DNA of 64,000 nucleotides from Vitrella brassicaformis CCMP3155 (Eukaryota > Protista > Chromerida). The notes beneath the pieces are model-generated. The model ran no database searches. It was given only the letters and a program-made list of their open reading frames with translations, and had not been told where the DNA came from. The stretch covers positions 62,001 to 126,000 of the forward strand of contig CDMY01000225.1 in NCBI GenBank assembly GCA_001179505.1, read 5' to 3'. The position numbers and the translations under genes were made by a program. Of this stretch, positions 3,796-21,226 are shown one piece after another. How positions within the stretch are numbered: position 1 is the stretch's first letter; each line of letters begins with the position of its first letter.

Positions 3796-4306
3796 TCAAA
3801 TGATTGCGAGCAGTTTGTACTCGATGTATCTCGTGTCCTGGGACAGCTCATTTAGCTCCGGCGGCACAATCAGGCGGCGTATCTCCCCCACCCGCATCGA
3901 CAACAATGCCTCCCGACGCCACTTGGAGTGAACCTGCACACAGGCACAGACGTGCTCGCCTTTGTGCATATGTCTGTGTGTGCGTGTGCTGACCTCACTG
4001 ATAGCGGCCACCACGCCCTTGAGCTCTGGCTGCTTGAGCTTGCCGCCGAAGGCATCCAACGACTTGAAGTCATACTTGACGCGGTGGTGGTGTTGTGGCT
4101 GCGGCCCGTTGCCCTCGCGCAGCACCTGATACGACACGCCCAGGGGGCTGCGGCGCAGTGAGGGGACGGCCTTCTCGGAGCTCTCGCTGTCTTGCTCACT
4201 GCCCGATGTGCTGAGTGGCACAAGGGAAAGGAACACATGACTGTTGATGATATGTTTTAAGTGAAATTGAAGCATACCTGCAGCTGTTCGCCTGATTGCG
4301 GTCCAT
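3796..4306 (-). CDS. Stand-alone degenerate FKBP-like protein (~130 aa, 3 exons)
   Basis: SPLGVSYQVLREGNGPQP...VKYDF...REALLSMRVGEIRRLIVPPEL...IEYKLLAI keeps the FKBP scaffold but lacks the FDSS, GWDEG and AYG..IPPN motifs. Inferred first exon is MDRNQANSC from ATG 4306. Confidence 0.7.
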
Positions 4307-4672
4307 AGCACCCGCCAAAGACGGGAGATGACGCCGCGAGACCTGGAAGTCATCGGCGAGCTTTTGATTCGATCGGGATTGGAGGGGAGAAAGAGGCGGA
4401 AAGAGCCTTTCCCAGCTTCTTGCGGCAAGCACCAGCGCACAGAGTGCAGGGATCTATCGTTTTAGAGCCAAACAACTCATCACCAAGGGCGAAGAAGCCT
4501 CCCTCGACAACAACTGCTCGTCACTGCGCGAAGGTCTCTCTCCGGTTCGTGGGGCACGAGAAGAGGGCACGACAGCTCCCAATAGGGCGCATCGCTACCA
4601 AGTGACCTCATCGAGCTGCGAGGCCGGACACAAAACGTCATCGACAAGACACGCCGTCGCTACAAGGAAGGG

Positions 4673-5754
4673 ATGGCGGCTCTCTATCTTGCGATACTGG
4701 CGTTGGCCCCTCATGGTATCAGCGGCTTCCAGGTACTTCAAGTGCCCACCGCGGCTCACACGAGCCGCACACAGCTGCTGAGATCACGGAGGAGACCATC
4801 TCGTAAGAATGGGGCTGAGGATGATGGATGGATGGATGTATGAGGGATGCCTGACGAGTTCCACGTGGCTGTGTTGGTGCAGGTGTGGCTTTGGCGATGT
4901 CCGGGACGGACAGAGCGGTAGGCCTCCTGCATGGCTGCGCCGTGTACTTCGACACTGCCGACGGCTATCAAGTCGACGTGGACGGCAAGCGGCGACCTTT
5001 CCCCCAGAAATGCTGGCAACACATCGGTAGGTTTGGCGACGTCAACATCGAAGCGGGCCTGCCGCAAATCAGGTGCACACACACACCAGGAGGATCTAGG
5101 TCGATTCCGTACCCAACAACCCTCATTGCTGCGTGTGAATCGTTGGTGCATCAGCGCGAGCGCACACGTGAGGTATCCCGCAAGAGCTGCAGCTGTGGGT
5201 CTTTTCCGGGGCAGCCCCGCCCACATCGATCAGACAGGAGGCTTCATTGTCAATGTGGGCGGCGAGTGGCGGCCCATTCGTAAAGAGGATTGGAAAGAAG
5301 TCATGGTCTTGACCGATATCGACATCCCCAAGATGCGCAGAGAGATGTAACTATGCATACAGACACATGGCAACAACAGATCGCTGCCTGCTGCTGCATT
5401 TGTTTCAGTGTTGGGGATGGAGGGGTGAATTCGACATTTTACGACGACAGCACCTTCACCCGGCATGGGAACTGCATGTATCAGGTCGTCAGACGCGGCA
5501 CTGGCGCGTGTCCGACATCCGGCGACACTGTCAAGTACAAAATAAAGAGGTGGGGCCACGGGTTCCCAGGCGAAAGAAACAGCGAATTCAGGGAGGAAGA
5601 CGACAGGACGCTCGAGGACTGCCAACGGTCCCCGAAGGGTTTTGAGCACGCCATGCTTTGGTCCATGAGGGTCGGCGAAGTCAGGCCCGTAATCAGCAAT
5701 GAATGTGTGAGAAGTGAATGGTATTTCGAAATTGAACTGCTTGACATAGAGTGA
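4673..5754 (+). CDS. Putative plastid-targeted protein with two short beta-rich modules and a C-terminal degenerate FKBP-like domain
   Basis: Exon 1 MAALYLAILALAPHGISG-FQVLQVPTAAHTSRTQLLRSRRRPS looks like a signal peptide, Phe+1 and a Ser/Arg-rich transit peptide. The last exon reads CMYQVVRRGTGACPTSGDTVKY...MLWSMRVGEVR...WYFEIELLDIE. Confidence 0.7.
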
Positions 5755-5866
5755 GTATCTGAAGTAGAGACGCTGCGCTCCAATGGACAGACAATGATGA
5801 CGATAGATATTCCTGTGCCAAGCGCAGAACACGCTACTGCTGAAGGTTTGTTTGAGGTGTGTTGAG

Positions 5867-7353
5867 CTATTGAGTGAGCATCTTGTGTCTGATCAGGATG
5901 GTCCTCCTGTCATTATCGACAGCCGACATCTCACTAGTATTGCTATTCACCACATCATCACCGCCACCACCACTACTACTCTCTAGAAAAGGCGCTAGCT
6001 GGTTCAGCCACACGTACGATACAAGGCACGTCAATCCCACCCCCAGTATATCCATCAGCACCTGTATACACGCGCTGGCATGGGCAGGGTCCACCCCGCA
6101 CGCCCGCAGCACCAAAGGCAGCAGCGTCCCCAACAAAGCACTGGTCAGGACGATCACGAACATGCTGGTACAAATGGCCATCGACTCGATGAGAGTGATG
6201 TCAAATAGGAACACCCGTATAAACGACGCCAGGAACAGGCAAGTGGCCAGCTGCACGCCGGTCCACAATTGCGATAGAAGGAAGCGCCATAGGCCCTTGT
6301 CGGTCGGAATCTTGCCGACAGCGATGCCGCGGATGACCAGGACGGCACTCTGGCCGCCCGTGTTGCCGCCAGCACCCACAAGCTGACAGCAGAAACCAGA
6401 CGCACGTTGTGCGTGTTTGTGTCTATCCGTGTGAGCGTGTGAATGTGGGTATTACCATTGTGAGGAAGTAGACGACGACGGGGTGCTGTTGTATGAGGGC
6501 ATCGAATCGCTTGAGGATGAAGCTACTGGTCGACTGCAGCAGCAACAAACCCACCAGCCAACACACACGGTGCCTGACGCCACAGCAGACAGACAGACAG
6601 ACAAGACACACGTACACCCACTGCTGCCGCACAGAGATGTATGGTCGTGCTGCCTGCCCATCCACACCAGAATATGTCCAGCGAGTCGGTCATATGCGTG
6701 GGAGTGGAGGGGGGAGGCGGACAGTGGGAACCGCACCTGAGCGAGAAAGAGCATCACAGACACACGCATTGACCAACGGACACGACAGCATGCTCATCCT
6801 GACAGGGTGCGACGTACCTCCTGTCGTGCGATATTGCGGTACCGTCCACGTTGCCCATATCGCCCATCTCACGGCCGTCGACGCCGCCCTGCCGCTGCCG
6901 CTCCAGAAGGCGAACAACCTGAGAACCCGCAGAGATTGCGAAGACGGGAAACTATGTAGGCGTGTGTCTGTGTGTGTGTGTGGTTGGCTGACCTCCTGCA
7001 GCCTTCTAATCTCTGCTCTATGCCTTGAAATCTCCTCTTCGTGCTGCAGCGATAGGGAGAAGGGGCTCTCGATGTCATTCCCCAGCACCTGAAACGCACA
7101 CAGCAGGTGAGAAAAGGTGAGCATGTGCCTGTGCATCGTCTCTCACCTCCCCGTTGGCGTCACAGCAGCTCCCGTTGCTTTCATTCTCAGCGAAGGATGT
7201 CAGTGGGTAGGTCTCCTGGACGAGCTCGCTGCTGCTGCTGCTGGCATCTGATACGTTGTGGTGTCTACGCATAGCGGAGGGGGGAAACAGCGGCATCCAA
7301 TTTGGCGGACCACGCGATCTGCGAGCCAAAAGCTGGGGGCCGCCCCCAGCCAT
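5867..7353 (-). CDS. mgtE: MgtE/SLC41-type magnesium transporter (membrane domain only, no CBS)
   Basis: FWHRVCWLVGLLLLQSTSSFILKRF, YFLTMLVGAGGNTGGQSAVLVIRG, GTLLPLVL..GVDPAHASACIQVLMDILG. The start codon is uncertain (candidate ATGs 7272-7377). Confidence 0.85.
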
Positions 7354-7375
7354 GTTTCCCCCTTCACCCCCGACC

Positions 7376-10300
7376 ATGGATATCATCAGTGGGAAGAAGC
7401 ATGGTGTCAAGAGGCCGCACATGCGGCTGAAAGTGCAGTGCAAAAGCAAGTGCTTCGACATCTACGTTGGCCACGGTGACAAAGGAGCAAACGCCGAGAT
7501 GCGCGGATGTTCGCGTGTCTGCAGGTGACCAGCATGTGCGTTGGCTGGGTCTGGTGACAGCCCTCGAGTATCAGAAGGCCGTCTACCCGCACCCGCTGCT
7601 CCTGCCCAAACGAGTCACCACAAAGGTGAACACACATACATGCTTCCCCTTGTTTGTGTGTGTCTCCCCGCATTTGTGTATGCATTGACAGGATGGGAAG
7701 CTTTTGCGTCCCCGGACAGTGCTGAACAGCGTGTTTGCCGACGGCGACACGGTCATTGTGGAGCTCAGGGACGGCGTGGGCGATGGCTATGGCGCCGGCC
7801 GCCCGCCGTTGTCGGTGCAGGGTCCGCCGAGCGGGGATGACGATGATGAGGAGGAGGCGGCCCAGTGGATGGACGACTCGTATGGCGCCGACAGCCACCT
7901 CATGGAGGCTACCATCAAGTATGGATGGACTGATGCTTGCTGATGGGGGGACGTGTGTGTGCGCACGCAGGTGGGATGTGGATCAGAGCAACTCCGCCAG
8001 CATCCCTGTCAAAGTGGTCGGCGAGTACACCGTCAGCAACAAGGTGAGACGACAGACGTACATTTCATACCATCTGAGCAGCGTAGTTTGCGTGTGTGGC
8101 ATTCGATGTCAGTGGGATGACATCTATCCGCAGTCAGTGTATGGTGGCCCCTTCGAGCTGCCCCTCGAGCCGATAGAGATCAATGAAGGCCAGTTCGAAT
8201 GGATCGCTGTGCGGGTGGGCTTAGGGAGACTCACACATAAGAATACAGTGCGACATGGGGATTGCTTTCTGTGTGCAGAAGTCCGTGCCAGGCTCATGCA
8301 CCTTCAAATTTGTGATGGAGGTGAATGGCCGCAGACACCCACAAACAACATGCGTGTGTGAATGGATCCATGCATACACACAGGATGGGAAGGAGTCGCT
8401 GTCGGAGAGCTTGCCCAAGACGAGGTCGGCGGCCTACAACACCCTCGAATTCACATGGGACTGCCCCATACACAAAGACCCAACAGGCAGGCTCTCTCTC
8501 TCACGCACACACACACTCTGTTTGGGTATGCATCCCCCTCTCTCCCTCTTTCGCCGCTCTGTCAGCTGTTTGTGTCCCAGACACAGCAGAGGAAGCCGCA
8601 GACGAGGCCCTGGAAGACGGTACATGACCTCACACCGTGTCCCACAGACGGCCAGCACACATACACAGCTTTTGAATGAATGTATGTGTCAGTGGTGGAT
8701 CCTCTCTTGGAGGTCACGTGGCAGAATATGCGGCTGTCGTGGCTGCCGCCCGACAGCCGCGAGTGCCTATCAGACGTCGTGAGGGAGTTCTTCGCCGTCA
8801 TCAGGGGGCTTTTCGACACATGCACGCTGCTGGTGCGTGCAGATTCAAATACTCGCACAAAAGATACGGATGCATTTGCGTGCATTTTGTGTATGTGCTG
8901 TTCGGCCAGTCGCCTGAGCTGTCCGATGAGCAGGTGCCGTCCATGTGTGTGGGCGACCTTGCGCATCTGCTGAAGCGAGCCCACTTGCTGCCGATGAAGC
9001 TCTCACTCAACCACCTGATGATGTTCTACAGAGACACCAGCAGCGCTGGTGAAAGGGGGCAGGTGACCTGAGACGAGACGACGCTCGTGTGTGTGCCCAC
9101 ACATCCGTGCAGGGTTTGGTGTGTGCGTGTGTCGTGTGTGTGTCTGTAGGATGCTCTGCCAGATGTGGGCAGTAGCAGTGCGTCGATTGTGTTGTCACAG
9201 CCGGTCGACCTGCCCCTCTTCATCGTGAGCTGAGAGGGAGACACACACCACACACGCCGAATGGATGCTTATCATTGGATGTGTCTCCATCTTTCCTCTG
9301 TTTCGTCGATTGGCCAGGATTTGCTGGTCCGTGTGTCGTGTGTGGTGCCGATGTCGGTGCCCCTCGCGGATGATGCCAAGCCGCAGACTGACGAAATATT
9401 CTTCCAATTCTGTGGCAGTGAGTGCGTCTTACTTCTATGCACAAAGCCCTCTGTTTGTGTGTGTGTGTGTGTGTGTCAGGTTGCCTGGTGCCCGCGTGTG
9501 AGGCGATATGTGCTGACGCCCTGGAGACGCAGGCAGACCTGCCACACCCAAATCTTCCTGAGGGCCTCGCATTCATCAAGGCATGCACACGCAGAGACAC
9601 ATTAGGGACACACTCACACACACGCGCCTGGGTGCTGGTGTGGTTTGGTATGCAGGAGCAAGCAGGTTCATTTCGCTCTCTGTTTTCCCTCCTGGCGGAG
9701 CCGTGTGACATCGGCGGCGATGAGACAGGTCCCTGCACACACACACGCATTCACAAGGCCGCACACAAAGCCAGTCTGTGAGTGCATCTGTCTGATGTTT
9801 CCATCATCGTCAGTTGCCTTGGTGCGTGTCGCGTCGGTCGATTCGCTGCTGTCTCGCGGGGCTGAGCTCATCAACCAGTCGTTCGCCAGACAGAAGACAA
9901 AAAACGACGGTCGGCCGACACAGACGCACACAGAGAAGAGGACAGATGCATCCTCACGTGTGTGCAGGCACGTCCAGCAGCGAGCAGCCGAGCAGCTCCC
10001 GCACAGAACACCAGCAGAATGCCCAAGCACAGGGCGAACAACAAACACAGCAGCAGCAACAGCAACAGCCACAGCCACAACAGCAGCCGCAGATCACCGA
10101 CGGCACCCAACAGCCAGGTACACACACCACCCATATACACGCACACAACCAGCCGTGTCTCTCTACCTTCCTGTCTATCTTTCCCGCCCTACCTGGCTGT
10201 AGAGGAGGGCAAACAGCAGCAGCAGCAGCCGCCGCCAGGGATGGAGGCCATTGTGCCGCAGCACACGCAGAGCGACGACCTCAGCGTCAACGAGGACAGA

Positions 10301-10752
10301 TTCATGACCGAACAAGAGGTAGGTACTGCTGGAGGTCAGGCACTTGACTCACATGAATTGGACACACACCTCTGCACGAGTACGTGTGTGTGTCAGTTGT
10401 CCGAGTGTCTGTCGTCGGCTGACTTGGACCGCCTCAGGGGCGAACTTGACAACCAAGTCCGAACGGTCAGCACACAGATACGGCCAGACACACTCAAAGA
10501 CACGTTCAGCGCCGGTTTTTGCCATCGTGTGTGCTGCAGCTGGGCCCCGCCGTGCCGTCGTGTTTGTTGTGTTGGGAGTTGGTTCAGCTGTGTGTGCGGC
10601 TGGGGTGTGCTCTGCACCCCATCCAGACGGAGATCGTCCAGTGGGAGACGCGTGTGGAGCCCCTGCTGCACACACTCATGACGCTCACCAGACGCATACA
10701 GATCGCCAACACCACCACCACAGCCGTGGCCAACATACAGCCCGCAGCATAG
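7376..10752 (+). CDS. Uncharacterised multi-exon protein with a Par3/HAL-N-like ubiquitin-fold N-terminus and an E-set/AMPK-CBM-like domain
   Basis: MRLKVQCKSKCFDIYVGHG..QHVRWLGLVTALEY..GKLLRPRTVLNSVFADGDTVIVEL resembles the HAL/Par3 N-terminus. IPVKVVGEY..W..FELPL..VPGSCTFKFVMEDGK resembles CBM48/AMPK1_CBM. Downstream exons were joined by eye and are less certain. Confidence 0.55.
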
Positions 10753-10997
10753 GGCGGGGCAATGTTGATGTGTCTGATGTCTGATGTATTTGTTGATGTG
10801 CATATTGATGTGTGGGGGGAACTTTGCTGACAGGGTGTTCGTCTGATTGCATATGCGTTCATCGTTTTCGACTTGAGTGATCGATGACCGTCTCACATCA
10901 CGAGCAAAGCACACATCTTTCATCGCTCCTATAAAGCTCGTCCGAGAAGCACGTCAATGCATCAATCAGCCACACAGCCAATGTGTGCTCGGCCCAT

Positions 10998-12608
10998 CTA
11001 CCCCAGCTTCGCCTTGGCAATCGACCACACAAGCGTGCCAAATATGGCGATGACAGAGCCTATCGCACCCAGGGGCGTGATGGGGTTGCGGAACACTATC
11101 ACGGTCGTCACTATCACCACCACACGCTTCAGCGTGTTGGCCACGGCGTGCGTCAAGGCATGTATACTGATCAATGAACAAGCGCGCACACCAGACAGCC
11201 ACGGACACACGTGAGGATGTGCTTGTGGTTATCCCCACACGGACACGTGTTTATGTGTACCTACCGACTAAGGGCGATGAAAGCGGTCTCGTTGTAAAGG
11301 TAGAAGAACAGGCCGGACCGTGCGGCTGACCAGATGACGGTGTCCCAGCCGTATTCCCGCACACCCTCGGCCCACGCGCCCTCTGGACTTGTCAGCTCGT
11401 GGTAGTCCACCACAAGCGCTATGGGCAGCGACAGGAACTGAACCAACATGGCACATGAGACGAAACGACCCATCTGTGGCTCCATCACAAGTGAATGTTT
11501 TGCTGACCGTGCTGACGATTGTGAGCAGAGAGAATATGTTCCCAGGTGTCATATTCTCCCCCAGAGCCTTCTTGTCCGACATCACACGCTTAGCATACAC
11601 GCCTGAACCACCACCCATTGCCACACACAAACACACGGATGCATCCCTACCGCCCCTGTCAGGCTGTGTCAGTCGTCCTTTGCTCACTCCTGAGAGCCGA
11701 GAAGAGGGCCGAGAAGATGGCGCCCCACAGGCCGATCCACGTGAATGAGAGCTCCTTCAGGGCGGCCAATGCCACACCGAAGATGATGGGAAGCAGGAAC
11801 AGATACGTCCAGATCGAGAACGTCTGCTTCAGCAGAACCATCGACAGTAGAGCGGTGAAGACGGGCTCGTTGGCCTTGACCACGTGGGTGAAACTCACGG
11901 CACCTGCCGCTGCACGGACACACAGACAGACAGACAGACACACATTGCGAGTGTGAAGAGCTCGATCGCCTGCTTCTTTCTGGCCTCTCTCTACGTACCG
12001 AATGAGAGCTGTCCGGTGACGTGGTTGCCAATGTGCATGAGGGCCTGGGGCACAATGGCCACCCAGAAGACCTCCCAGGACATGAGCCTCGGCAGCTTGC
12101 GGATGCCCGTGCCCCACAGCGTGACGAACCACACCCAGCTGACCAGCATCTGGATGGCCGACACTGTACACGGCAGACTCACCTGAATGCAACGAGGGAC
12201 AACGAACCAGCCACCCACGGCATTCAGTTGAGTGATTCATGAGTCATCGACTCACCCATCAGCACTCACCATGTTGAGTGTCCTCTTGTTCTCGACGTTG
12301 GCAATAGTGTTGAAGAAATACCAGCCGCATATCAACAGTGCGGTGTATGCGGTCGACAGCCATCCGGTGGTTGTGTCAATTCCCGCCCTCCCCTTGTTGG
12401 ACAGAAGCAGGATGTTCGTCTGCGATGCCGATGCGGGCGGGAGATCCGCAGTGACGTCATCGCGAGTGCCTGCTCCGCCGAAAGTCCAGTAGATCTGAGC
12501 TGTGTCCTGCCTGCCGACCCTCGCCTGCCTTCCTCCTTGTCCTCCGCCTTGCTTCAGCGGAGTGGCCTCACTCGGCTGCGGTCCTCCACCCTCCGCCGAC
12601 ATGCTCAT
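10998..12608 (-). CDS. Plastidic phosphate translocator (TPT/PPT/APT family)
   Basis: GWYFFNTIANVENKRTLN, GAVSFTHVVKANEPVFTALLS, KELSFTW.GL..A, LFFYLYNE.AF.AL, THAVANTLKRVVVIV...FRNPITPLGAIGSVIAIFG are canonical pPT motifs. Confidence 0.93.
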
Positions 12609-12678
12609 TCACAGTGAATGTGGCACGACGTACTACGTTGACAGACCAAGGCCAGATTTGGGGAGGAAGCCAATCGCG

Positions 12679-12730
12679 CAGATCTGCAGGGTTTGGGTCA
12701 CAGGGTTTGGGTCACAGGGTTTCAGGGTCA
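12679..12730. promoter_or_regulatory. Candidate promoter of the translocator: CAGATCTG palindrome plus three tandem CAGGGTTT (telo-box-like) motifs
   Basis: CAGATCTG at 12679. CAGGGTTT at 12687, 12701 and 12715 (14-bp period), 70-115 bp upstream of ATG 12608. Confidence 0.45.
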
Positions 12731-12742
12731 GGCCAGGTCCCC

Positions 12743-13760
12743 CCTCCCATGGACGGAGACAGAGTGGCCGACAGAACCGAACGCACTGCTGTCGTCCATG
12801 GCAGAGATGGGAGGGCACACTGTCACATAGACTGTCAGCTCAAAAGCGCCCCTGCGATGGCTAAGCGGATAAGTATGTCAGTGAGTATCGACACAGACGA
12901 AGACGGCACGTCGTGTCATCGCTGGCAGCACAAAAACAGATACACGAGTCGAATAAAAGTCAGCACACACACACGGCAGATGACATAGACACCCCACGTC
13001 GATCTCGCCGCCACACGCACACACACAATGGACAGAAGAATAAAAACCACTGCGATCACCACACACACGACAGGCCGACGGAGAGCACACACACACGACA
13101 ATCCCACTCAGCCATCCAACACACGCACTCACGCAGTCAAAACTCTCTGTCGCTCTCACAGACCATCCCGTCGAATGAAAAGGAAACACACACGGCAGAC
13201 AGAAACCGCCGCATGAGTGTGTGGGGGGCCGACAGACAGACAATACACTCATTCCTTCGCTCAAAACCGAGGCACAACGAGGGAAGAGCCCCCGGCCGCA
13301 CACATGAGTGTGTGACACACAGCCGCCCCCACGTGTGTGTGTGTGTGTGTGTGTGGACTCTCTCCTACCCTATGCGGATCAACCGCAGCTGAAAGTAGCA
13401 GACAGCATAGATGGCTGGCACTATGATTTGCCTCACTTCCCCCTCCCGCATCGACAGCATCGCCTCACGCAGCCACCAACCCGTACTAGACACACGCCAC
13501 ACCGCCCCACGGTCCTCGCAGACTTTGTCCCGGCCGTCGAATGCATCGCGCCACCCGATGCGGTCATACTTGATGCGGTCGGTGTCCGTGGGCCATCTGC
13601 CGGTGCCCTCCGTGACGATGCGATAGCGCACACCCAACGGGGTCACAGTGAAGCCATCAATGTTGCTGTAAAGGAAGGGACCAAACATGACAGACGGCGA
13701 GGTATGTCTTGTCCGTCCTCCTTTGCACCTGGCCCGCTGTGCTGCGGTGGTGTTGGCCGA
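12743..13760 (-). repeat. Segmental duplication, copy A (FKBP-like last exon, preceding intron and ~600 bp 3' flank); paralogous to 16067-17300
   Basis: Shared blocks such as cagagtggccgacagaaccgaacgcactgct, aaactctctgtcgctctcaca, cacacatgagtgtgtgaca..cacagccgcccccacgtgtgtgt and cgatgcgatagcgcacacccaacggggtcacagtgaagccatca occur in the same order. Confidence 0.9.
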
Positions 13761-14703
13761 CTGCTGCTGCTGCGTGCCGCTCGGCTGCGGTCCAGCGGTG
13801 CCGGCAGAAATCCTCACCGGCGCACCGCCACCACTGGCCACACTGACACACACACACAGACACGTGAGCCAATGGATCAATCAGTGTGGCAGTCATGGGC
13901 AGTCGATTTGCTTGGGATGCACACCTGCGGCTGTTGGATGTCCGCTGGGCCGTCGGCCGCTGGGGAATCCCACGCAGCCTGTTTAATGCAGCCACACAGC
14001 CCATGAGGGCGAGAGAGAGGGTGGGAGATGGCATATCGGTGTGTTTGATTGATTACCGGGGGTCTTGTTGGTTGCCTCCTGCTGTGCCGTAGATGGGAAT
14101 GAGGCTGTCGACCGTCACGCCCGCCTTGCACACCGGACAGTCCGTCATGCGGTGACCGACCAGCCACTCGCGAAGACACGCCCAGCAGTACTACGCGGCA
14201 CACGACACACCCCACACTCACACCACTCATGTGCGACGTACCCTGTCCCGTGTCCTGCATCATGTGGTGCATCATGGGTGGTCTCCCTCACCAGGTGGCC
14301 GCATCGCGTGACGACCGGCTCCGTGACCTCCTCGAAGCAAATGCCGCACGCGAACGGCGAGGCATCGTGGTTGTCGCCACTGCTGGCCACTGCTCCCTCG
14401 CCGCTTGCAGCTGCTGGTGGTGGTTCGTTGTGGTCATGGACAGGTGACCTGACACACAGGAGGGCACACCAAGTCAGGATCAACACACGTGTGTGTGCTG
14501 TGCTGTGTGAAGATCCCTCACGTGTCTGTGTCAGCGGAGCAGAACTTGATGCGGTCGTGGAATGACCGGTCGATGGCCACACGCCGCCCCTGCACGTCCA
14601 TCTCGTAGCCGCCACGGCCGTCCTCATACACACGACACTCAAACACTCCGACGCTCGACGGCGATGGTGCGGTGGGACCCGCAGACGACGCAGACGAGCT
14701 CAT
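13365..14703 (-). CDS. RNF5/RNF185/RMA1-type RING finger fused to a degenerate FKBP-like domain
   Basis: FACGICFEEVTEPVVTRCGHLYCWACLREWL..TDCPVCKAGV...LIPIYG..GNQQDPR..GIPQRPTAQR (C3HC4 plus RNF5-type tail). Phase-consistent splices lead to TPLGVRYRIVTEGTG...WLREAMLSMREGEVRQIIVP...FQLRLI. Confidence 0.85.
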
Positions 14704-16066
14704 TGATTGATGCAGTACTGCAGGCGGTGCGACGAACGATGCCCGGTCTGCATCCAGCACACACACACAGACACGGGCACAAGTGAGTGTCTGTGTGCAT
14801 GTGTGAGGCTGATTATCAGAGTGTCATTGGGCGTACCTGTGCGGCTCTGATGCGAATAGGGCGACGCGTGACGAATGAGAGGTAATGGAGAGGACACCGA
14901 CACAAACAACCCTGCTCACCCACCAGCACACACAACACTCGGAGACCTTCTCTGTGTGTGTGTGTCCTCACCTGTTGTGTCTGAGGGCGAGCGACAGAAA
15001 TGCAGTCAGTCAGGCCGTCACCGAACGCGATGATGATATCCCTCCCGCCACACACCACACAAACCACTAATGGACCTGACAGTGTGTGATGACAGACACA
15101 AGGATGGGCGCATGCTTGGCCAGGGCTGCGCTCATGTGTGCAGGCCGACCTCTCTGTGTTTGTGTGACGATTTCACTGATCAATCTTGATAGTTGCCCTC
15201 ACAAAGGCGCCACATAAACAGACACACGAGATCTGACACACCAACAATGAGGCGCCCGTCACCCGTGCTGCATGTGTGTGTGTGTGGGTGCCTTTCCCTC
15301 ACCCCTCTGTCTGATGCCAATGAATGCGGTGAGATGACGACCACCGCCTGCACACACATATTGGACACACGGCAGGAACTGATGCATTTCTGTCATCGGT
15401 CGACGGCCATGTGATTGTCGTTGGCTCACCTGTGCCCTCACTGACAAACCGAACGAGACCAGCAGCGCCAAAAAGGTGGTGACGATCTGCGAGCTGATGT
15501 TTTTGTCCAAGCAAAGATCGGATTCATCGGTTTGGGTGAACGGTCGGCAGATGAGCGTGAGAGGCGGCCGAGGAGCCATTAAATGAGTCAATGCGACGAA
15601 TTCGTCCACTCAGCCGTTTGTCCAATGGCTGCGTCTGTCTGCCATTGTCGCCCGTCTGTGTCGGCCGGCCGCTCGTCGAGATGAGATGCCACTCGATGGC
15701 CAGGCGGACGACAGAGACCGAGGCACGACGGAAGCAAACAGCGCAGCACGACCGACACAGACACGATTGGTGGATGCATCATCTCACGGCAGCTTTCGCT
15801 CTCTCCCCCTATCCATGTGATTTGGGTGCCCCCGTGTGTGAGCACTGGCGCACCGTGGAGTGAATCACCGGCCCATCGGTGTGTGTGACGTGCCGGCACT
15901 TCACCGAACGACGCCCCGCCCACCGCACACACACGGGAGCAGAGAGGGGGAGAGAGAGTTAAAACACACCATACACACACGGATGGATGTCGGCAGGCAG
16001 AGTGGATGGAAAAAGGCTTTCTGTCTGTCTGTCTGTCTGTCTGATTGGCCGCCGCATTTCAGTGTT

Positions 16067-17300
16067 GCCTCCCACCACACACATGGACGGGGGCAGAGTG
16101 GCCGACAGAACCGAACGCACTGCTCACGACCGTGACAGAGATGGGAGGGCACACAGGGGTACAGCTTTGGACCAAAGCAGATATCACATAGATGCCCCTC
16201 ACTGACAGCTCAAAAGCGCCCGCGCGATTGAAAAGTGGATGAATATGTCAGTATGGACACACCCAGACAGAGAGGAAGACGGCACATTGTGCCATTGCCG
16301 TCGGTCGGACCGCAGACAACACAACACATAGAGGGAAGAACACGTCGATCGCAACACGAACAAAACAGTACCACCACGTCGTCGCCACCGCATCTGCAGT
16401 AGATATTTATTCGTATACACATGTGCAGATGTATGTGTATGTATGTATGTATGTGTACATACAGGGATCCCTCTCTGCGCCGGGGTCGGTCGATACAATC
16501 ATGTTCCGCTGCACCCCCCGGGCCCACACAGCACATAGAAAGACACGTACGCGATCCCCACCCCCGTACGCCACCATCACCACACACACAGTCTCTCTGT
16601 TTGGCCAGTGGCACACACAGTCAGGACAATCCAATTAAGCCATTCAACACACGCACTCACGCACCGTCACTCTCACGCCGTCAAACTCTCTGTCGCTCTC
16701 ACACCATCACGCCGAATATAAAGGAAACGGACACACGAGCAGGCAGAAACCGCCACATGAGTGCGTGGCGGGCCGGCAGACAGACAGCTCACTCACTCCT
16801 TCGCTCAAATCGGAGGCACACAGTCAGCCAGGCGACGAGTGAAGAGCCCCCCGCCACACACATGAGTGTGTGACAGACACAGCCGCCCCCACGTGTGTGT
16901 GGACTGTGTCCTACTCTATGATGCTGACCAACCGCAGCTGAACATAGCGGAGAAAAAATTCATATCTGGCTGGCACTATGATTTGCCTGACTTCGCCCTC
17001 ATTCATCGACAGGAGCGCCTCACGCAACCACTCAGGCCGATCAGACACACGCCACACCTCCCCACGTTGATCGATGAGTTTGTCCCGGCCGTCGAATGCG
17101 TCGCGCCACCCAACCCAGTCGAACTTGAAGCGTGCGCAGATGCCGGTGCCCTCCGTGACGATGCGATAGCGCACACCCAACGGGGTCACAGTGAAGCCAT
17201 CACTGTCGCTGCAAAGTGGATGAAGAGGACAAATGGCGACAGAGGCCTTTCTGGTTCTGTCCATCTGCGTACCTGGTCTGCTGTGCGCCATGTGTGTTGG
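16067..17300 (-). repeat. Segmental duplication, copy B (paralogous to 12743-13760)
   Basis: Same conserved non-coding blocks and FKBP exon as copy A. Homology extends into the preceding exon end (NTHGAQQT-ag|gt versus NTTAAQRA-ag|gt). Confidence 0.85.
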
Positions 17301-18595
17301 GCGTGTCGGTCTTGACAACGCCATACATGGCCGCGTTGACATCGAAGGCCGCCTGCTCTCGGGCGTTGTCCATCCGCAGCGGCACGTTGGCCTCGGCGGG
17401 CGAGGCGCCGAGTCGCTGCCGGCGGTGGTGGTCGACGATGCGGCTGATGTGGTCGGGCTGCACCACATCCACCGGCCGCGGCCACCTGAAGACACACACA
17501 ATACACACAGCCATCCTCGAGTGGGCATCGCTGTCACTGAGTGCTTCGATGGGTCGATGCTCACATATCGAATCTGTTTGTCAGCTCTTGGTTCATGGTA
17601 TCCACAGTCGACTGAGTGGTCGATATGACCTGATAACCACACACGTCGACAGACCGGATGGGGTCACCGCCACTCAGAGGCAGCAGGAAGGGCTCGACGG
17701 CCTGGGGCAAACAGGTAGCAACGAGATGAGCAACAGGCAGCATCAACCCCCCCCTCCTCCCCCCCCCCTCTCTCTCTTTGTGCCAATCTCGTCACCTGTA
17801 TCTCTTTGTTGAGGTTGTCACGTCGTGTGTTGGCGGCCCGCAGCTGTGCCTCCAGCCGGGCCTTCTCAGCGGCGAAGGCCTTCATGATGCCTTCAAGCGT
17901 CTTGACGGTGTCGCCCATCTCGGCGGGGATACCCGTGGTGGGCAGCCGCAGGTCGGTCCCAACGCTGCCACTGGAAGTGGCCTCTGTTGGAGTCTTGTCG
18001 AGATGCGACATCATCAGCTTGACCCGAAAGTCATGAGGACCTGCAACACACAAACAGCCGGCCGAATGAATGATGAGTGCGGATTGGTGATAAGTGTGTC
18101 CCCTCTCGTTGCCTTACAGTACTTACCGGTGTGGTGCCGCTTGGCCGCGTCGTCGATCAGGTGTTTGACCGACGCCGCCTTGCGGGAAGTGCGCATCGTT
18201 TCGGCGTCGAGGATGGCCGTGTGGATGGTCTTGAAGGCCTCCGAGTCCATGTTGAGGAACAGCCGCTGCTTGTCGTCCTTGATGAGTCGCCCGTCCCAGC
18301 AGCCCGAGAACAGCGCCGCCAGCAGAGTGCCCTCCACCCCCTCCCCTTGAGTCAACATCTTCCGCTTCACTCGCCACTCGCTGCCGCCCACATTGAGCAG
18401 CAGCATGTCATCGGGCGATGCTGTTGATGGGTCCGATGCGCCGTGTTTGGTTCTCTCTTGCTGGGCATCGTCGTCAGCTTGGCGGATCTGTGCGCGCAGC
18501 TGGCTGATGGCGTCGCCGATGGCCGTCACGGGCACGTGCAGCTGATTGAGAATCGCATGGGCGCTGAACTGGCCAGCGGCCGACTCGGCCTCCAT
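16911..18595 (-). CDS. KCTD-type BTB/POZ + coiled coil + second BTB-like domain + degenerate FKBP-like domain
   Basis: LLLNVGGSEWRVKRKML..EGTLLAALFSGCWDGRLIKDDKQRLFLNMDSEAF. Second unit reads SVDVCG..ISTTQST...DHISRIVDHHRR. Last exon reads TPLGVRYRIVTEGTG...WLREALLSMNEGEVRQIIVP. Confidence 0.85.
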
Positions 18596-18970
18596 CCTTT
18601 GTCGCGGCGCAACAGATCTGTCAGCGATGCCTGACAACCACACAAAACCGAGCACACATCAATGAGCATGCTTGAGTGTTGTTCCATTGTCGTCCTTGCA
18701 CACCTGATGCCCAACACAAAGGCGATGCCAAAGTCCTTGGGATGATCAGCCGGAGGTTGTTTTGGGTTCACTAGCTGGCAGGGTTTGATGTGCAGGGTTT
18801 GCAGCCTCTGAGCTCCCCGCGAGAACGACACGATTCAGGTACAACACGCGCTCAGATCTGGACAGATCTCCACAGAAGATGCATGTCTGTTTGTGTGTTC
18901 GTTCAGATCTGACCTTCCTGTCAGCAGTCATCACAGCAGTCGTCATCCGCCTACATGCTGGTGTGAGGCG
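18596..18970. promoter_or_regulatory. Bidirectional promoter between two BTB-FKBP paralogues
   Basis: 375-bp divergent spacer with CAGATCTG at 18613, 18853 and 18904, CAGATCTC at 18863, and CAGGGTTT at 18779 and 18793. Confidence 0.55.
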
Positions 18971-20675
18971 ATGATGCATCCCTTCACGCGCCAGCAGGCG
19001 ACCATGCAACTCGACACAAGGGTCCGGCTCGCCATAGAGGGCCTGCAGGCACAGCGGGAGGAGATCGCAGCCTTGCACGAGACTAACAAGGTGCTACTCG
19101 ACGCTGCGGATCTGTCCAACGAGATCCTGCAGCTCAATGTGGGCGGCTGTCATTCATCTGTCAAGCGCAAGCACATGACGAGCGTCGAGGGCACTCTGCT
19201 GGCGGCTCTCTTTTCGGGGCGGTGGGATCAGCGGCTCATCCGGGACGGCAGCAGCAGGATCTTCCTCGATGTTTGCCCGCATGCCTTTGAGGCCATCCGT
19301 GACGCCATTTATGCGGGTGGGAAGGAGGCTGTCGAGCACATGAGAGACCAGGCGGCCGAGAGAGACCACATGGGTATGCACCGGACACAAACACACTTAC
19401 GCTCCTGCACCCAGATGTCTGTCCACTGTTGCCTGTGCAGGTATTCACGACTTCTACGTAAGGCTGCTCTTATCGCCATTGCACAAAGGCGCAGCTGATG
19501 AGTCGTCGAAGGGCCGTGATGGGGAGGTGTGTGGGCCCGAGGCCGAGCATGAGCTGTTGGGGGGATTCCTCAGCACAGTGAGAGACTTCGTGCGCGCCTT
19601 CGAGCATGAGCAGGCCGAGATCGACAGGCAGCTGGGAGCGGCCAAGGTCGAAATAGAGGTGAATCATCCGACAACACAGGCCGAGAAATCCACCTCTGTG
19701 ACGGACGCATTGTGTGTCGTTGTGTCCGATGTTCGTTGCAACAGAGCGTCGGTCCGTTCGTGAAGCCCCTGCACGGCGAGGAGCCCATATGCTCCCTGGA
19801 TGTCAACGGCAAGTCAATCTCGACGCTGCGGTCGACCACAGAGGAGATGGGCAACTCGGCGCTTGGGCGGAGAAACGATGCTTCAGTGTAAGCTGCACAC
19901 ACCCACGTTCCACACAGCCCCCTCCTCCCACTTGCCTTTGTCTCTTGTGGCTGGCCTGGCTGTTGCTTTCAGGTGGTCATCGCCCGTTGAGGGTGTGTCG
20001 GAGGACCATATTCGGCGGCTCATCGATTTCTACCGCCGCAAGCGCCTGGCGGCCAACTCCACAGACCCACAGCTGCTGGGCAGCGTTGGGGTGCCCCTCC
20101 TGATGGACACACGCACTGAGCAACGGTTCTTTGAAAAGGTGAGGCTGGTGTGCAGACGAGGAAGGGGTGCGCTGCGATGCGGTGTGGCATGTCAACTGTC
20201 TTTCCCTCCACGTGCATGGTTCTGCAGACGTGTGCCATGTATGGCTGTGAGGTTGCCGCTGATGTGTTTCGCACCCAACAAAGGTACGTGCACGCGCACA
20301 CCTCCAGCTCCCATGTGTATTCCTCGCTCCTGTGTCTTTTCGACGCGCAGCTCATTCCTGCGGTCGCCGATGGGTGTGCGTTACAGAGTGATCCAACAAG
20401 GCACCGGACCACGACCAAGGACACACCACCGTGTTGAGTTCAACCACACATCATGGAAAGATGGCTTCGAGGGACAGCACGTTCTACAGCACCAGACCAA
20501 CATCGTCCACGCCTTCCCCGGCATGTACGAGTGGGCCGCTGAGGCAGTCCTGTCGATGCGCGCGGGTGAGGTGCGGCGGTTGATAGTGCCGGAGGAGCTC
20601 TGGTCGCCGTCAAGCTCATTTGCGAAGGGAAAGGCGTATGCGGAGATCCAGCTGCTGCGTGTCGTGAGCGACTGA
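18971..20675 (+). CDS. KCTD-type BTB/POZ + coiled coil + second BTB-like domain + degenerate FKBP-like domain (paralogue of 16911-18595)
   Basis: LQLNVGG..SVKRKHMTSVEGTLLAALFSGRWDQRLIRDGSSRIFLDVCPHAF; SLDVNGKSISTLRST; DHIRRLIDFYRRKRL; SPMGVRYRVIQQGTGPRP..WAAEAVLSMRAGEVRRLIVPEEL..YAEIQLLRV. Confidence 0.85.
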
Positions 20676-21226
20676 CGCTGATCGCGGCGTGGCTTGTGCT
20701 GGGCGAAGGGAGAAGGAGACAGAGGTTGGTCTCGCCTTGTGCCCTTGGCTTCATACGATGGCCACCTGGTGTGCCGTGTCCGTGTCCATGTGGGTGTCAC
20801 TGTGTGTCCGTTGTGTCGAGTATTTGTCATGTCAGTTTATAATCTGCTGGTCGTTTTCATTGAAGTGTTCTCTTTGGTGCCTGTCTAGAGGGGTGTGGAC
20901 AAGTGTAAGGCGCTGTGTGTGTTTTTGATGGACCTGGCCAAGCGGTCTGTGTAAATGCCGTCGATGTTTGATGGATGTTTGATTTCATATCGAGTTCGAC
21001 ACACAAAGCAAGAACCAGCCGAGAAAACGAAGAAATAGATCAGATAATGCCGAGAGAAGGCTGCCGACCGGTCCCGATGCGAGCTCATTCGTGGGGCCAA
21101 AATCGTTCCCCTCCCTCCCCGACCCCCGATGCCTGTCGACACATTGCAAGAGTGTGGTGTCCAGTCCCTGCCGCAGTCGCAGCCGCCCTGACCTGTTGGA
21201 CCTCTCTGAGCGGCGGCGTCGCTGCA

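What the first reader, a model, noticed from the sequence alone, without database searches (positions are those of the whole stretch)
3796..20675. Five degenerate FKBP-like domains used as a mobile C-terminal module, three of them behind E3-ligase domains
Seen: FKBP-like domains at ~3800-4150 (stand-alone), ~5420-5750 (plastid-leader protein), ~13370-13660 (after a RING), ~16920-17200 and ~20350-20670 (after BTB-coil-BTB). All keep TP.GV.Y.V..EG.G, L.SM..GE.R..IVP and the last beta-strand. All lack FDSS and GWDEG, and most or all of the 80s flap (AYG...IPPN). Established: these regions form the PPIase/FK506 pocket; RING domains are E3 ligases, and BTB domains commonly act as Cullin-3 adaptors. 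Inference: a catalytically dead FKBP fold has been repurposed as a substrate-recognition domain in a lineage-specific ubiquitination toolkit, for example reading a proline motif or unfolded client.
Basis: partly seen in the sequence, partly recalled or inferred. Interest (0 to 1): 0.78.

Follow-up and report, generated by a model that had tools for sequence, protein, structure and literature searches.

The report
Fast-evolving FKBP-like end modules in Vitrella
The five domains are real, shortened and probably enzyme-dead FKBP folds from a family of at least 150 end-exon copies found only in the alga Vitrella brassicaformis, joined to ubiquitin-ligase and other gene fronts, with a former binding pocket that changes faster than silent DNA, as expected of a target-recognition module.

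Summary
Five roughly 95-residue FKBP-like domains end five genes in the window.

- **Fold and homology:** Pfam misses them (14 bits or less against a cut-off of 21). A 37-copy profile finds only FKBPs in the PDB (E 3.7e-6). An AlphaFold model (pLDDT 94) superposes on Mip/FKBP domains (TM 0.83).
- **Pocket:** The 80s loop is deleted and most pocket residues are lost. The F-D of "FDSS" survives in two of the five, so "all lack FDSS" overstates.
- **Fusions:** Three independent spliced transcript contigs join the BTB exon to the FKBP-like exon of gene 5. Gene 4 has a public model plus two RNA joints. The RING gene has four of five joints, consistent reading frames and paralogous full-length transcripts.
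- **Scale:** The genome (Vitrella brassicaformis CCMP3155) holds at least 151 matches, nearly all ending at a stop codon. Every named relative is from Vitrella.
- **Mobility:** All five window cassettes follow a phase-2 intron. Tails are interleaved among unrelated heads on a tree.
- **Selection:** Columns equivalent to the FKBP pocket have dN/dS 1.5 (1.2-1.9), against 0.65 for the rest.
- **Limits:** Only about a third of members carry RING or BTB heads. The second "BTB" is unproven.

The scan reached similar readings on other DNA of this genome. This is a new variant of a known kind.

The parts
3796..4306 (-). Gene 1 (public model CEL94691.1 = P0056, 127 aa): a stand-alone FKBP-like protein. 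Exons 4306-4278, 4210-3994 and 3933-3799, plus the stop codon. The FKBP-like domain is at 4155-3799 and is split by a 60-nt intron (3993-3934).
   Evidence: Sequence read. P0056 equals the predicted splice product. The intron before the cassette is phase 2, AG|C.
4673..5754 (+). Gene 2 (CEL94692.1 = P0047, 285 aa): a hydrophobic leader ending ISG|F, two 'GGY' modules, and a terminal FKBP-like exon at 5409-5751 (domain 5455-5751).
   Evidence: The phase-2 acceptor is at 5408/5409. The leader was judged by reading only; no predictor was run. Start coordinate extrapolated from the tblastn match of residue 13 at 4709.
13365..14703 (-). Gene 3: GGY module, then a C3HC4 RING with an RNF5-like tail motif, then a linker, then the FKBP-like domain. 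About 313 aa. Exons A 14703-14520, B 14446-14292, C 14190-14057, D 13978-13925, E 13842-13729 and F 13665-13368. The RING is at 14348-14128 and the FKBP-like domain at 13652-13368.
   Evidence: RNA-run contigs show joints A-B, B-C, C-D and E-F. Transcript P0183 joins the C-terminal half of the RING to an exon F-identical tail. Paralogue transcript P0185 has the full architecture. 5'UTR introns at 14748-14836 and 14911-14970 extend the transcript beyond this range.
16911..18595 (-). Gene 4 (public model P0166, 453 aa): KCTD-type BTB (about 18424-18125), coiled coil, a conserved 115-aa region of uncertain fold, and a terminal FKBP-like exon at 17208-16914 (domain 17195-16914).
   Evidence: P0166 maps at 96-100% identity in five blocks. 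RNA joints 18038>18125 and 17482>17562. The BTB profile hits the K13, KCTD10 and SHKBP1 BTB domains. The acceptor is phase 2.
18783..21000 (+). Gene 5 (CEL94699.1 = P0036, 425 aa; transcript form P0151, 435 aa): BTB (about 19106-19381), coiled coil, the conserved region, and a terminal FKBP-like exon starting at 20351, with the coding sequence ending at 20672 (domain 20355-20672). Seven exons including UTRs.
   Evidence: Three independent spliced contigs (L031-L033) from two Logan run assemblies (ERR558152, SRR646408) and one JGI assembly are collinear with the window, with six introns removed. Pfam BTB_2 E 2.5e-4.

Best explanation
The five domains are terminal-exon cassettes of a Vitrella-specific family with at least 150 genomic copies. 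Each cassette encodes a shortened FKBP fold of about 95 residues, followed at once by a stop codon.

Shown:
- The fold is FKBP.
- The 80s loop is deleted and most FK506/peptide-pocket residues are replaced.
- Each cassette sits behind a phase-2 intron.
- Cassettes have been exchanged among unrelated gene fronts. In this window these are a short head, a leader plus GGY repeats, a RING, and two KCTD-type BTB-coiled-coil heads.
- For gene 5 the fusion is present in mRNA assemblies.
- One face of the domain evolves faster than synonymous sites, while the core is constrained. That face comprises the columns aligned to Y26, R42, V55, I56, W59 and F99, the loop remnant, and alternate residues of two strands.

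Inferred:
- The domain no longer isomerises prolines. It works as a diversified protein- or ligand-binding module.
- In the RING- and BTB-headed members it is the target-recognition end of an E3 ligase, comparable to SPRY in TRIMs or MATH in BTB-MATH proteins.
- In head-less members it may act as a free binder or decoy.
For: - **Homology and fold:** The profile search against the PDB returns only FKBPs above the noise, best E 3.7e-6. The AF2 model has pLDDT 94 and Foldseek TM 0.83-0.84 to LpMip/BpMip/FKBP52.
- **Copy number and position:** There are 151 matches in the genome, 148 without internal stops. Of 44 domain hits in the first 30 loci, 39 end within 3 codons of a stop.
- **Distribution:** In the search of 1.84 billion representatives, family-type hits (50 bits or more, full-length) are cleanly separated from canonical FKBPs (12-40 bits, profile positions 3-82 only). 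All named ones are Vitrella.
- **Transcripts:**
- **Phase-2 introns:** 5 of 5 window cassettes. Upstream YAG falls in the phase-2 register 115 times, against 66 and 57 for the other two registers.
- **Head and tail trees disagree:** BTB tails need at least 18 changes on the tree. RING tails need 5 of 5. P0159 (BTB head) and P0158 (RING head) are a strongly supported sister pair. In the window, D3 (RING head) and D4 (BTB head) are 71% identical, while D4 and D5 (both BTB heads) are about 40%.
- **Selection, from 38 independent nearest paralogue pairs:**
  - Whole domain: dN/dS 0.77.
  - A-priori pocket columns: 1.51 (1.19-1.91).
  - Pocket columns without the loop remnant: 1.41 (1.20-1.67).
  - All other columns: 0.65.
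  - Cross-validated fast set of about 17 columns: about 1.9.
  - MxxGExR block: 0.29.
Against: - No binding partner, activity or localisation is known.
- Only about a third of 114 family proteins carry RING or BTB heads, so 'E3 substrate receptor' cannot be the whole story.
- Pocket columns were mapped by sequence alignment to BpMip, not by 3D superposition.
- dN/dS above 1 could be inflated by selection on synonymous sites in this GC-rich genome, by gene conversion, or by misalignment in the loop remnant.
- The D-E joint of the RING gene was not displayed.
- Some transcript assemblies of this family may be chimeric.
- Several surface motifs (W.D.FDG, REA.LSMREGE.R) are strongly conserved, which would also fit a constant partner.
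Confidence: 0.6

Rival explanations
1. The domain is a constant docking or oligomerisation module. The FKBP-like tail binds one common partner or other family tails. It thereby gathers many different heads (RING, BTB, SET, small proteins) at one hub. The variable positions are merely unconstrained surface.
For: Family-wide invariant or near-invariant residues include W34, D36, F38, G40, M68, G71, E72 and R74. The MxxGExR block has dN/dS 0.29. The tail is the shared element, while the heads differ.
Against: The fast columns are not merely neutral. Their dN/dS exceeds 1, with confidence intervals that exclude 1. They alternate regularly with constrained columns along two strands (1.8-2.0 against 0.44-0.81). 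Most conserved residues are canonical FKBP framework positions.
Confidence: 0.2
2. The cassettes are neutral or selfish spread. They multiply by tandem duplication and exon shuffling in unstable arrays. Many copies are non-functional passengers or decaying exons, and the high dN/dS reflects relaxation.
For: The copies lie in dense arrays: 49 matches on one 228-kb contig, 27 on another and 19 on a third. Domain-wide dN/dS is high, at 0.77. Some copies are fragments.
Against: 148 of 151 matches have open frames. The core blocks are clearly constrained, with dN/dS 0.29-0.48. Many members are found in transcript assemblies. Relaxation alone gives omega near 1, not 1.5-2 confined to one set of columns.
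Confidence: 0.1
3. The domain is still an enzyme or chaperone. It retains PPIase or holdase activity with an open, loop-less pocket. It would assist folding of clients handled by the attached heads.
For: F36 and D37 equivalents, and a Trp next to the W59 position, are kept in most copies. UniProt auto-names a few members 'peptidylprolyl isomerase'.
Against: The Y26, F46, V55, I56 and W59 equivalents are replaced or hypervariable. Y82, H87, I90 and I91 are deleted together with the 80s loop. A catalytic site would not be the fastest-evolving part of the domain. No single window domain reaches Pfam's FKBP_C threshold.
Confidence: 0.07

Closest known systems
Mip-type and FKBP12-type FKBP domains (Pfam PF00254; e.g. 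Legionella Mip 1fd9/8bk6, Burkholderia BpMip 4dz3)
   Same: They share the five-stranded sheet wrapped round one helix (TM 0.83). They also share the motifs G.Y.....G.G, F-D and M..GE.R..IP and the last strand.
   Different: The Vitrella domain is 12-13 residues shorter because it has no 80s loop, and it has a 3-residue deletion after the strand ending in W34. Most pocket aromatics are lost. It scores below the Pfam threshold. It is always the last exon of the gene, and it exists in at least 150 fast-evolving copies in one species.
Catalytically inactive FKBP-like interaction domains (FK2 of FKBP51/52, AIP; named from my own knowledge, with AIP and FKBP52 also among the weak profile hits)
   Same: An FKBP fold with a degenerate pocket, used for protein-protein contacts rather than catalysis.
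   Different: Those are single, conserved genes with TPR partners. Here the fold is a shuffled terminal cassette, hugely expanded, with a diversifying surface and RING, BTB, SET or other heads.
Expanded E3-ligase receptor families under positive selection (TRIM RING-SPRY, BTB-MATH, F-box families; from my own knowledge; a MATH-BTB expansion paper, PMC4091423, appeared)
   Same: These are lineage-specific tandem expansions. An E3 head (RING, or a BTB of CUL3-adaptor type) carries a C-terminal domain whose binding face evolves fast.
   Different: The receptor fold is FKBP, which was not described in that role in the papers I could search. Many members have no E3 head. No target class is known.
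RNF5/RMA1-type RING ligases (motif recalled from memory, not tested)
   Same: Gene 3 and its paralogues have C3HC4 RINGs followed by CPVCKA....IP.YG....QDPR, as I recall for RNF5.
   Different: The C-terminal membrane anchor is absent. A linker plus the FKBP-like cassette takes its place, and an N-terminal GGY module is added.

Membership tests
FKBP-type PPIase domain (Pfam PF00254 FKBP_C) | FKBP fold: an antiparallel beta-sheet wrapped around a short helix | tested here: met
   AF2 model with pLDDT 94. The top 50 Foldseek PDB hits are FKBP/Mip-type domains or complexes containing one, TMq up to 0.84.
FKBP-type PPIase domain (Pfam PF00254 FKBP_C) | Match to the family profile above the curated gathering score | tested here: not met
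   D1 scores 14.4 bits and D4 11.7 bits, against a cut-off of 21.1. D2, D3 and D5 have no hit. Only 7 of 114 family proteins, including multi-copy ones, match FKBP_C at E 0.001 or better. The reverse profile search finds only FKBPs, E 3.7e-6. This makes the domain a remote homologue.
FKBP-type PPIase domain (Pfam PF00254 FKBP_C) | Conserved pocket residues (FKBP12 Y26, F36, D37, F46, V55, I56, W59, Y82, F99) | tested here: not met
   By the HMMER alignment to BpMip, only F36 and (mostly) D37 persist. Y26, V55, I56, W59 and F99 are hypervariable, F46 has become Arg, and Y82 is deleted.
FKBP-type PPIase domain (Pfam PF00254 FKBP_C) | 80s loop flanking the pocket | tested here: not met
   There are 3-6 residues where canonical FKBPs have about 16. 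Canonical hits align only to profile positions 3-82.
FKBP-type PPIase domain (Pfam PF00254 FKBP_C) | PPIase activity and FK506/rapamycin binding | not testable with these tools
   This needs biochemistry.
CUL3 adaptor proteins (BTB plus substrate-binding domain) | A BTB domain of the KCTD/T1 or related type | tested here: met
   Pfam BTB_2 E 2.5e-4 (gene 5) and 0.063 (gene 4). A subfamily profile hits the BTBs of K13 (2.2e-5), KCTD10 (6.6e-5) and SHKBP1 (1.4e-4).
CUL3 adaptor proteins (BTB plus substrate-binding domain) | Binding to Cullin-3 | not tested
   No Vitrella CUL3 was fetched, and no complex job was run.
   A profile of the region finds nothing in the PDB at E up to 10. The AF2 model has pLDDT 64. 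The best Foldseek rows are Kv4.3 T1, KCTD16, KCTD10 and Skp1, but with E above 1 and TM about 0.45.
RING-type E3 ligases | A complete C3HC4 set of zinc ligands with RING spacing | tested here: met
   Exons B and C read C-x2-C-x11-C-x-H-x2-C-x2-C-x12-C-x2-C. The half-RING in exon B gives Pfam E 2.6e-4. The RING of paralogue P0015 hits Pex10, TRIM5, RNF4 and BRCA1, down to E 8e-12.
Diversifying E3 receptor families (TRIM-SPRY or BTB-MATH type) | Lineage-specific tandem expansion with positive selection on the binding face | tested here: met
   Caveats: a pairwise counting method was used, and the pocket was mapped by sequence alignment only.
Diversifying E3 receptor families (TRIM-SPRY or BTB-MATH type) | Every member carries the E3 head | tested here: not met
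   Of 97 distinct tails, 25 have BTB heads, 5 RING, 19 short and 48 other or unknown heads.

The most novel reading that the evidence does not exclude
Vitrella has built its own variable recognition system on the FKBP scaffold. It consists of more than 100 diversifying binders, each delivered as a plug-in last exon to RING and CUL3-type BTB ligases and to secreted or plastid-routed proteins. The system would serve as an innate-defence or partner-discrimination repertoire against viruses, bacteria or the coral holobiont. This would be a new fold class of hypervariable receptor.
Probability: 0.25. Interest if true: 0.85.

Novelty: new variant of a known kind. Interest (0 to 1): 0.72.

Why it matters
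FKBP folds are known as enzymes, drug receptors and a few fixed interaction domains. A species-specific family of about 150 copies, whose old pocket is the fastest-evolving surface and which is shuffled as a last exon onto ubiquitin-ligase heads, would add a new scaffold to the short list of natural hypervariable binders.

It would also give a concrete example of exon shuffling through a single intron phase in an alveolate. And it would point to an unstudied recognition or defence layer in the closest photosynthetic relatives of apicomplexan parasites.

The Vitrella genome paper does not mention FKBP, BTB or ubiquitin at all.

Tried and rejected
- **Pfam alone:** sub-threshold, so it could not settle homology.
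- **JGI metagenome scan with the family profile:** found only one canonical FKBP at 27% identity. Records of the window's own genome are left out there, so this is weak evidence for absence elsewhere.
- **The look-up of encoding contigs for the NCBI model of gene 5:** not on record. The transcript form P0151 worked instead.
- **Word search with P0019:** only 12 hits, too insensitive to list the family.
- **Ancestral-state counting for per-site dN/dS:** I did not attempt it by other means. I used independent nearest-pair Nei-Gojobori counts instead.
- **Alternative last exons:** P0019 and P0155 share a head but differ in tail. The second tail lies on the opposite strand 8 kb away. An assembly chimera or a strain difference is as likely, so no claim is made.
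- **Second BTB:** not supported.
- **Spliced model of the RING gene:** The search was done exon by exon, by reference, as rows of alignment A4. That search did not return the gene's own public model, and the joined step was left out.
- **Complex prediction:** not run, because no specific pair is claimed to bind.
Full report
**1. Observation**

The window translates into five FKBP-like segments:
- D1: 3799-4155(-)
- D2: 5455-5751(+)
- D3: 13368-13652(-)
- D4: 16914-17195(-)
- D5: 20355-20672(+)

Aligned, they share 15 invariant columns and are 35-43% identical to D1. D3 and D4 are 71% identical. D1 contains an in-frame 60-nt GT..AG intron at 3993-3934. This was later confirmed by the public 127-aa model P0056 (CEL94691.1).

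**2. Are they FKBP?**

Pfam gives only sub-threshold FKBP_C matches, over the LSM..GE.R stretch: 14.4 and 11.7 bits against a cut-off of 21.1, and three domains with no hit. Further tests were as follows.
- A profile of D2-D5 against PDB sequences returned 24 FKBP-family chains among 26 matches at E up to 10; all hits below E 1 are FKBPs, best E 0.002.
- With 37 genomic copies (A3) the best E improved to 3.7e-6. The first 40 hits are FKBP-family: Mip-type, FKBP52 FK1 and AIP.
- AlphaFold on A3, with D3 as target, gave pLDDT 94 and pTM 0.83, with five strands and one helix.
- Foldseek placed the model on Legionella Mip, BpMip, TcMip, FkpA and FKBP52/51/12, with TMq up to 0.84 and E 2e-6.

The fold claim is confirmed.

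**3. The pocket**

The HMMER alignment to BpMip has posterior values mostly 0.9 or higher. I map BpMip numbering to FKBP12 by an offset of 7; that offset is from my own knowledge. Family columns correspond as follows.

| Family column | FKBP12 residue | State in the family |
|---|---|---|
| 31 | Y26 | hypervariable |
| 38 | F36 | kept |
| 39 | D37 | mostly kept; G, P and E in D1, D2 and D5 |
| 44 | R42 | variable |
| 48 | F46 | Arg |
| 56 | E54 | mostly Asp |
| 57, 58 | V55, I56 | hypervariable |
| 61 | W59 | variable; a conserved Trp sits at column 60 |
| 87 | F99 | variable |

The 80s loop (Y82, H87, I90/I91) is replaced by 3-6 residues. The pocket is therefore largely dismantled.

**4. Scale and taxon**

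The genome is 72.7 Mb in 1064 contigs, and the window is C225:62001-126000. It holds at least 151 matches to the D2-D5 profile. Of these, 148 have no internal stop, and E reaches 1e-44. Forty-nine lie on one 228-kb contig (C1000), 27 on C748 and 19 on C364. A sixth copy on C225 lies 15 kb before the window.

In the first 30 loci, 39 of 44 domain hits end within 3 codons of a stop.

The exhaustive search of 1.84 billion representatives gave 782 hits at E 0.001 or better. They split cleanly:
- Family-type proteins score 50-141 bits per domain and cover the whole profile.
- Canonical, often multi-domain FKBPs score 12-40 bits, cover only profile positions 3-82, and have about 25-30 residues after the match.

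Every family-type protein that carries a name is from Vitrella brassicaformis CCMP3155. The others come from unnamed MMETSP, JGI, ENA or Logan assemblies. The nearest canonical relatives I checked are from other MMETSP organisms and keep the 80s loop.

**5. Are the fusions real?**

*Gene 5.* The 435-aa protein P0151 is in the same 90% cluster as the NCBI model CEL94699.1. It is encoded without interruption on three contigs of 1.7 kb, from two Logan run assemblies (ERR558152, SRR646408) and one JGI assembly. These contigs align to window 18783-21000 in seven blocks, with six introns removed. mRNA therefore joins the BTB exon to the FKBP-like exon.

*Gene 4.* The NCBI model P0166 (453 aa) maps at 96-100% identity in five blocks, 18595 to 16914. 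Contigs of RNA-like runs show the joints 18038>18125 and 17482>17562, with CT..AC ends. A DNA-like run (X3) shows none.

*Gene 3 (RING).*
- Reading the sequence together with the joints 14446>14520, 14190>14292, 13977>14056 and 13665>13729 gives six exons, A to F.
- Their frames are continuous, for about 313 aa.
An exon-by-exon alignment (A4) was used as the search query.
- It returned transcript P0183 (181 aa). This links the second half of an RNF5-like RING, the linker, and a tail identical to exon F. Its upstream part differs slightly from the window, so it is an allele, a paralogue or a hybrid.
- It also returned P0185 (381 aa), a full-length paralogue with the architecture GGY module, RING, linker, FKBP-like domain.

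*Heads.* The RING has all eight zinc ligands. Paralogue P0015 hits Pex10, TRIM5, RNF4 and BRCA1 RINGs, down to E 8e-12. BTB1 is a genuine KCTD/T1-type BTB: a subfamily profile hits the K13, KCTD10 and SHKBP1 BTBs at E 2e-5 to 1e-4.

*The "second BTB".* The region between the coiled coil and the tail has no PDB sequence match. Its model has only pLDDT 64. The BTB/T1/Skp1 fold matches it gets are not significant, with E above 1 and TM about 0.45.

**6. Partner domains**

There are 114 family proteins in hand.
- Pfam sees RING in 5-6, BTB_2 in 3, SET, HMG box and SLBP in one each, and FKBP_C in 7.
- By homology, about 30 proteins share the architecture BTB, coiled coil, conserved region, tail.
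- On 97 distinct tails the heads are 25 BTB, 5 RING, 19 short and 48 other or unknown.
- Eight proteins carry 2-5 family-type copies by the 45-bit criterion; P0001 shows six matched stretches in all.
- 85 of the 114 end within 5 residues of the domain.

E3 heads are therefore common, but they are a minority.

**7. Mobility**

All five window cassettes lie behind a phase-2 intron. Four of them split a serine codon as AG|C. Among 96 copies, many share the acceptor ...cctttgcag|C GAC AGT GAT GGC TTC. Upstream YAG occurs 115 times in the phase-2 register, against 66 and 57 in the other two.

On a tree of tails, head types are interleaved. BTB needs at least 18 changes and RING needs 5 of 5. A BTB-headed and a RING-headed protein form a strongly supported sister pair.

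In the window itself, the RING gene's tail is the closest relative of the tail of BTB gene 4. The two BTB genes, by contrast, have distant tails.

**8. Selection**

I therefore used 38 phylogenetically independent nearest pairs among 96 unique copies, each with nucleotide distance 0.35 or less, and Nei-Gojobori counts. Global pS is 0.26.

| Site class | dN/dS (95% bootstrap interval) |
|---|---|
| Whole domain | 0.77 |
| 16 pocket-equivalent columns, defined a priori | 1.51 (1.19-1.91) |
| The other 79 columns | 0.65 (0.57-0.73) |
| Pocket columns without the loop remnant | 1.41 (1.20-1.67) |
| Strand columns 29/31/33/35 | 1.8 |
| Strand columns 48/50/52 | 2.0 |
| Neighbouring columns 28/30/32/34/36 | 0.44 |
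| Neighbouring columns 49/51/53 | 0.81 |
| MxxGExR block | 0.29 |

No permutation out of 20,000 reached the observed value for the pocket class. A cross-validated test chose the fast set of about 17 columns on half of the pairs and scored it on the other half; this gave about 1.9 (1.6-2.4).

Caveats: this is a counting method, and codon bias and gene conversion could distort it. The loop remnant may be misaligned. The pocket was mapped by sequence, not by 3D superposition.

**9. Interpretation**

The best reading is a catalytically dead FKBP scaffold turned into a diversifying binding module. It is spread as a last exon, and in the RING and BTB members it plausibly serves as the target-recognition end of an E3 ligase. 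Rivals are listed with odds: a constant docking module, neutral or selfish spread, and retained PPIase or chaperone activity.

**10. Literature and earlier notes**

Full-text searches found nothing on this family. The Vitrella/Chromera genome paper (PMC4501334) never mentions FKBP, peptidyl, BTB or ubiquitin.

The scan has noted the same family on other pieces of this genome. Follow-up agents there reached similar readings. I saw these notes after my own selection analysis. The phase-2 lead came from one of them, and I tested it here.

Noticed in passing
window 14650-14540 (-), window about 4880-5300 (+), and proteins P0013, P0018, P0115, P0185: A second family-specific module of about 45 aa, 'G[LV]F...VY.D..GGY.V.V.G..RPI'. 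It occurs once in exon A of the RING gene and twice in gene 2. A crude regex finds it in at least 11 other family proteins. Pfam has no match.
   Followed up: partly
G000:C1000:180260-181380 (+) and 189133-189621 (-): The NCBI model P0019 and the JGI transcript P0155 share an identical 172-aa RING head but carry different FKBP-like tails. The second tail lies on the opposite strand, 8 kb away. This could be an assembly chimera, a strain rearrangement or something stranger; it is not resolved.
   Followed up: partly
L021:1137-1788 (G000:C327) and G000:C748:215816-219954: Tandem cassettes, each ending in a stop codon, are nevertheless spliced into proteins with 2-6 FKBP-like domains (model P0001; transcripts P0184 and P0007). 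The stop codon of an upstream cassette must therefore be removed by splicing.
   Followed up: partly
window 18595-18838: BTB genes 4 and 5 are divergent, head-to-head paralogues. Their 5' ends are under 200 bp apart, which suggests a shared bidirectional promoter.
   Followed up: no
window 13846-13863 and 15269-15290: (GT)n/(CA)n tracts inside introns. Contigs of all four runs, DNA-like and RNA-like, break there, and this hid one splice joint of the RING gene.
   Followed up: no
G000:C225:46543-46737: A further copy or fragment of the FKBP-like cassette lies 15 kb upstream of the window start.
   Followed up: no
proteins P0057/P0152, P0058, P0113: Exceptions to the 'always C-terminal' rule. 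In P0057/P0152 the cassette is followed by a transmembrane stretch and a Cys-rich extension. In P0058 it is followed by an HMG box. In P0113 it is internal to a 1202-aa protein that contains an SLBP domain.
   Followed up: no
window 5867-6379 (-) and 10998-12600 (-): Between the family genes lie ORFs that, on reading, look like an MgtE-type magnesium transporter fragment and a sugar-phosphate/phosphate translocator-like membrane protein. No tool was run on them.
   Followed up: no
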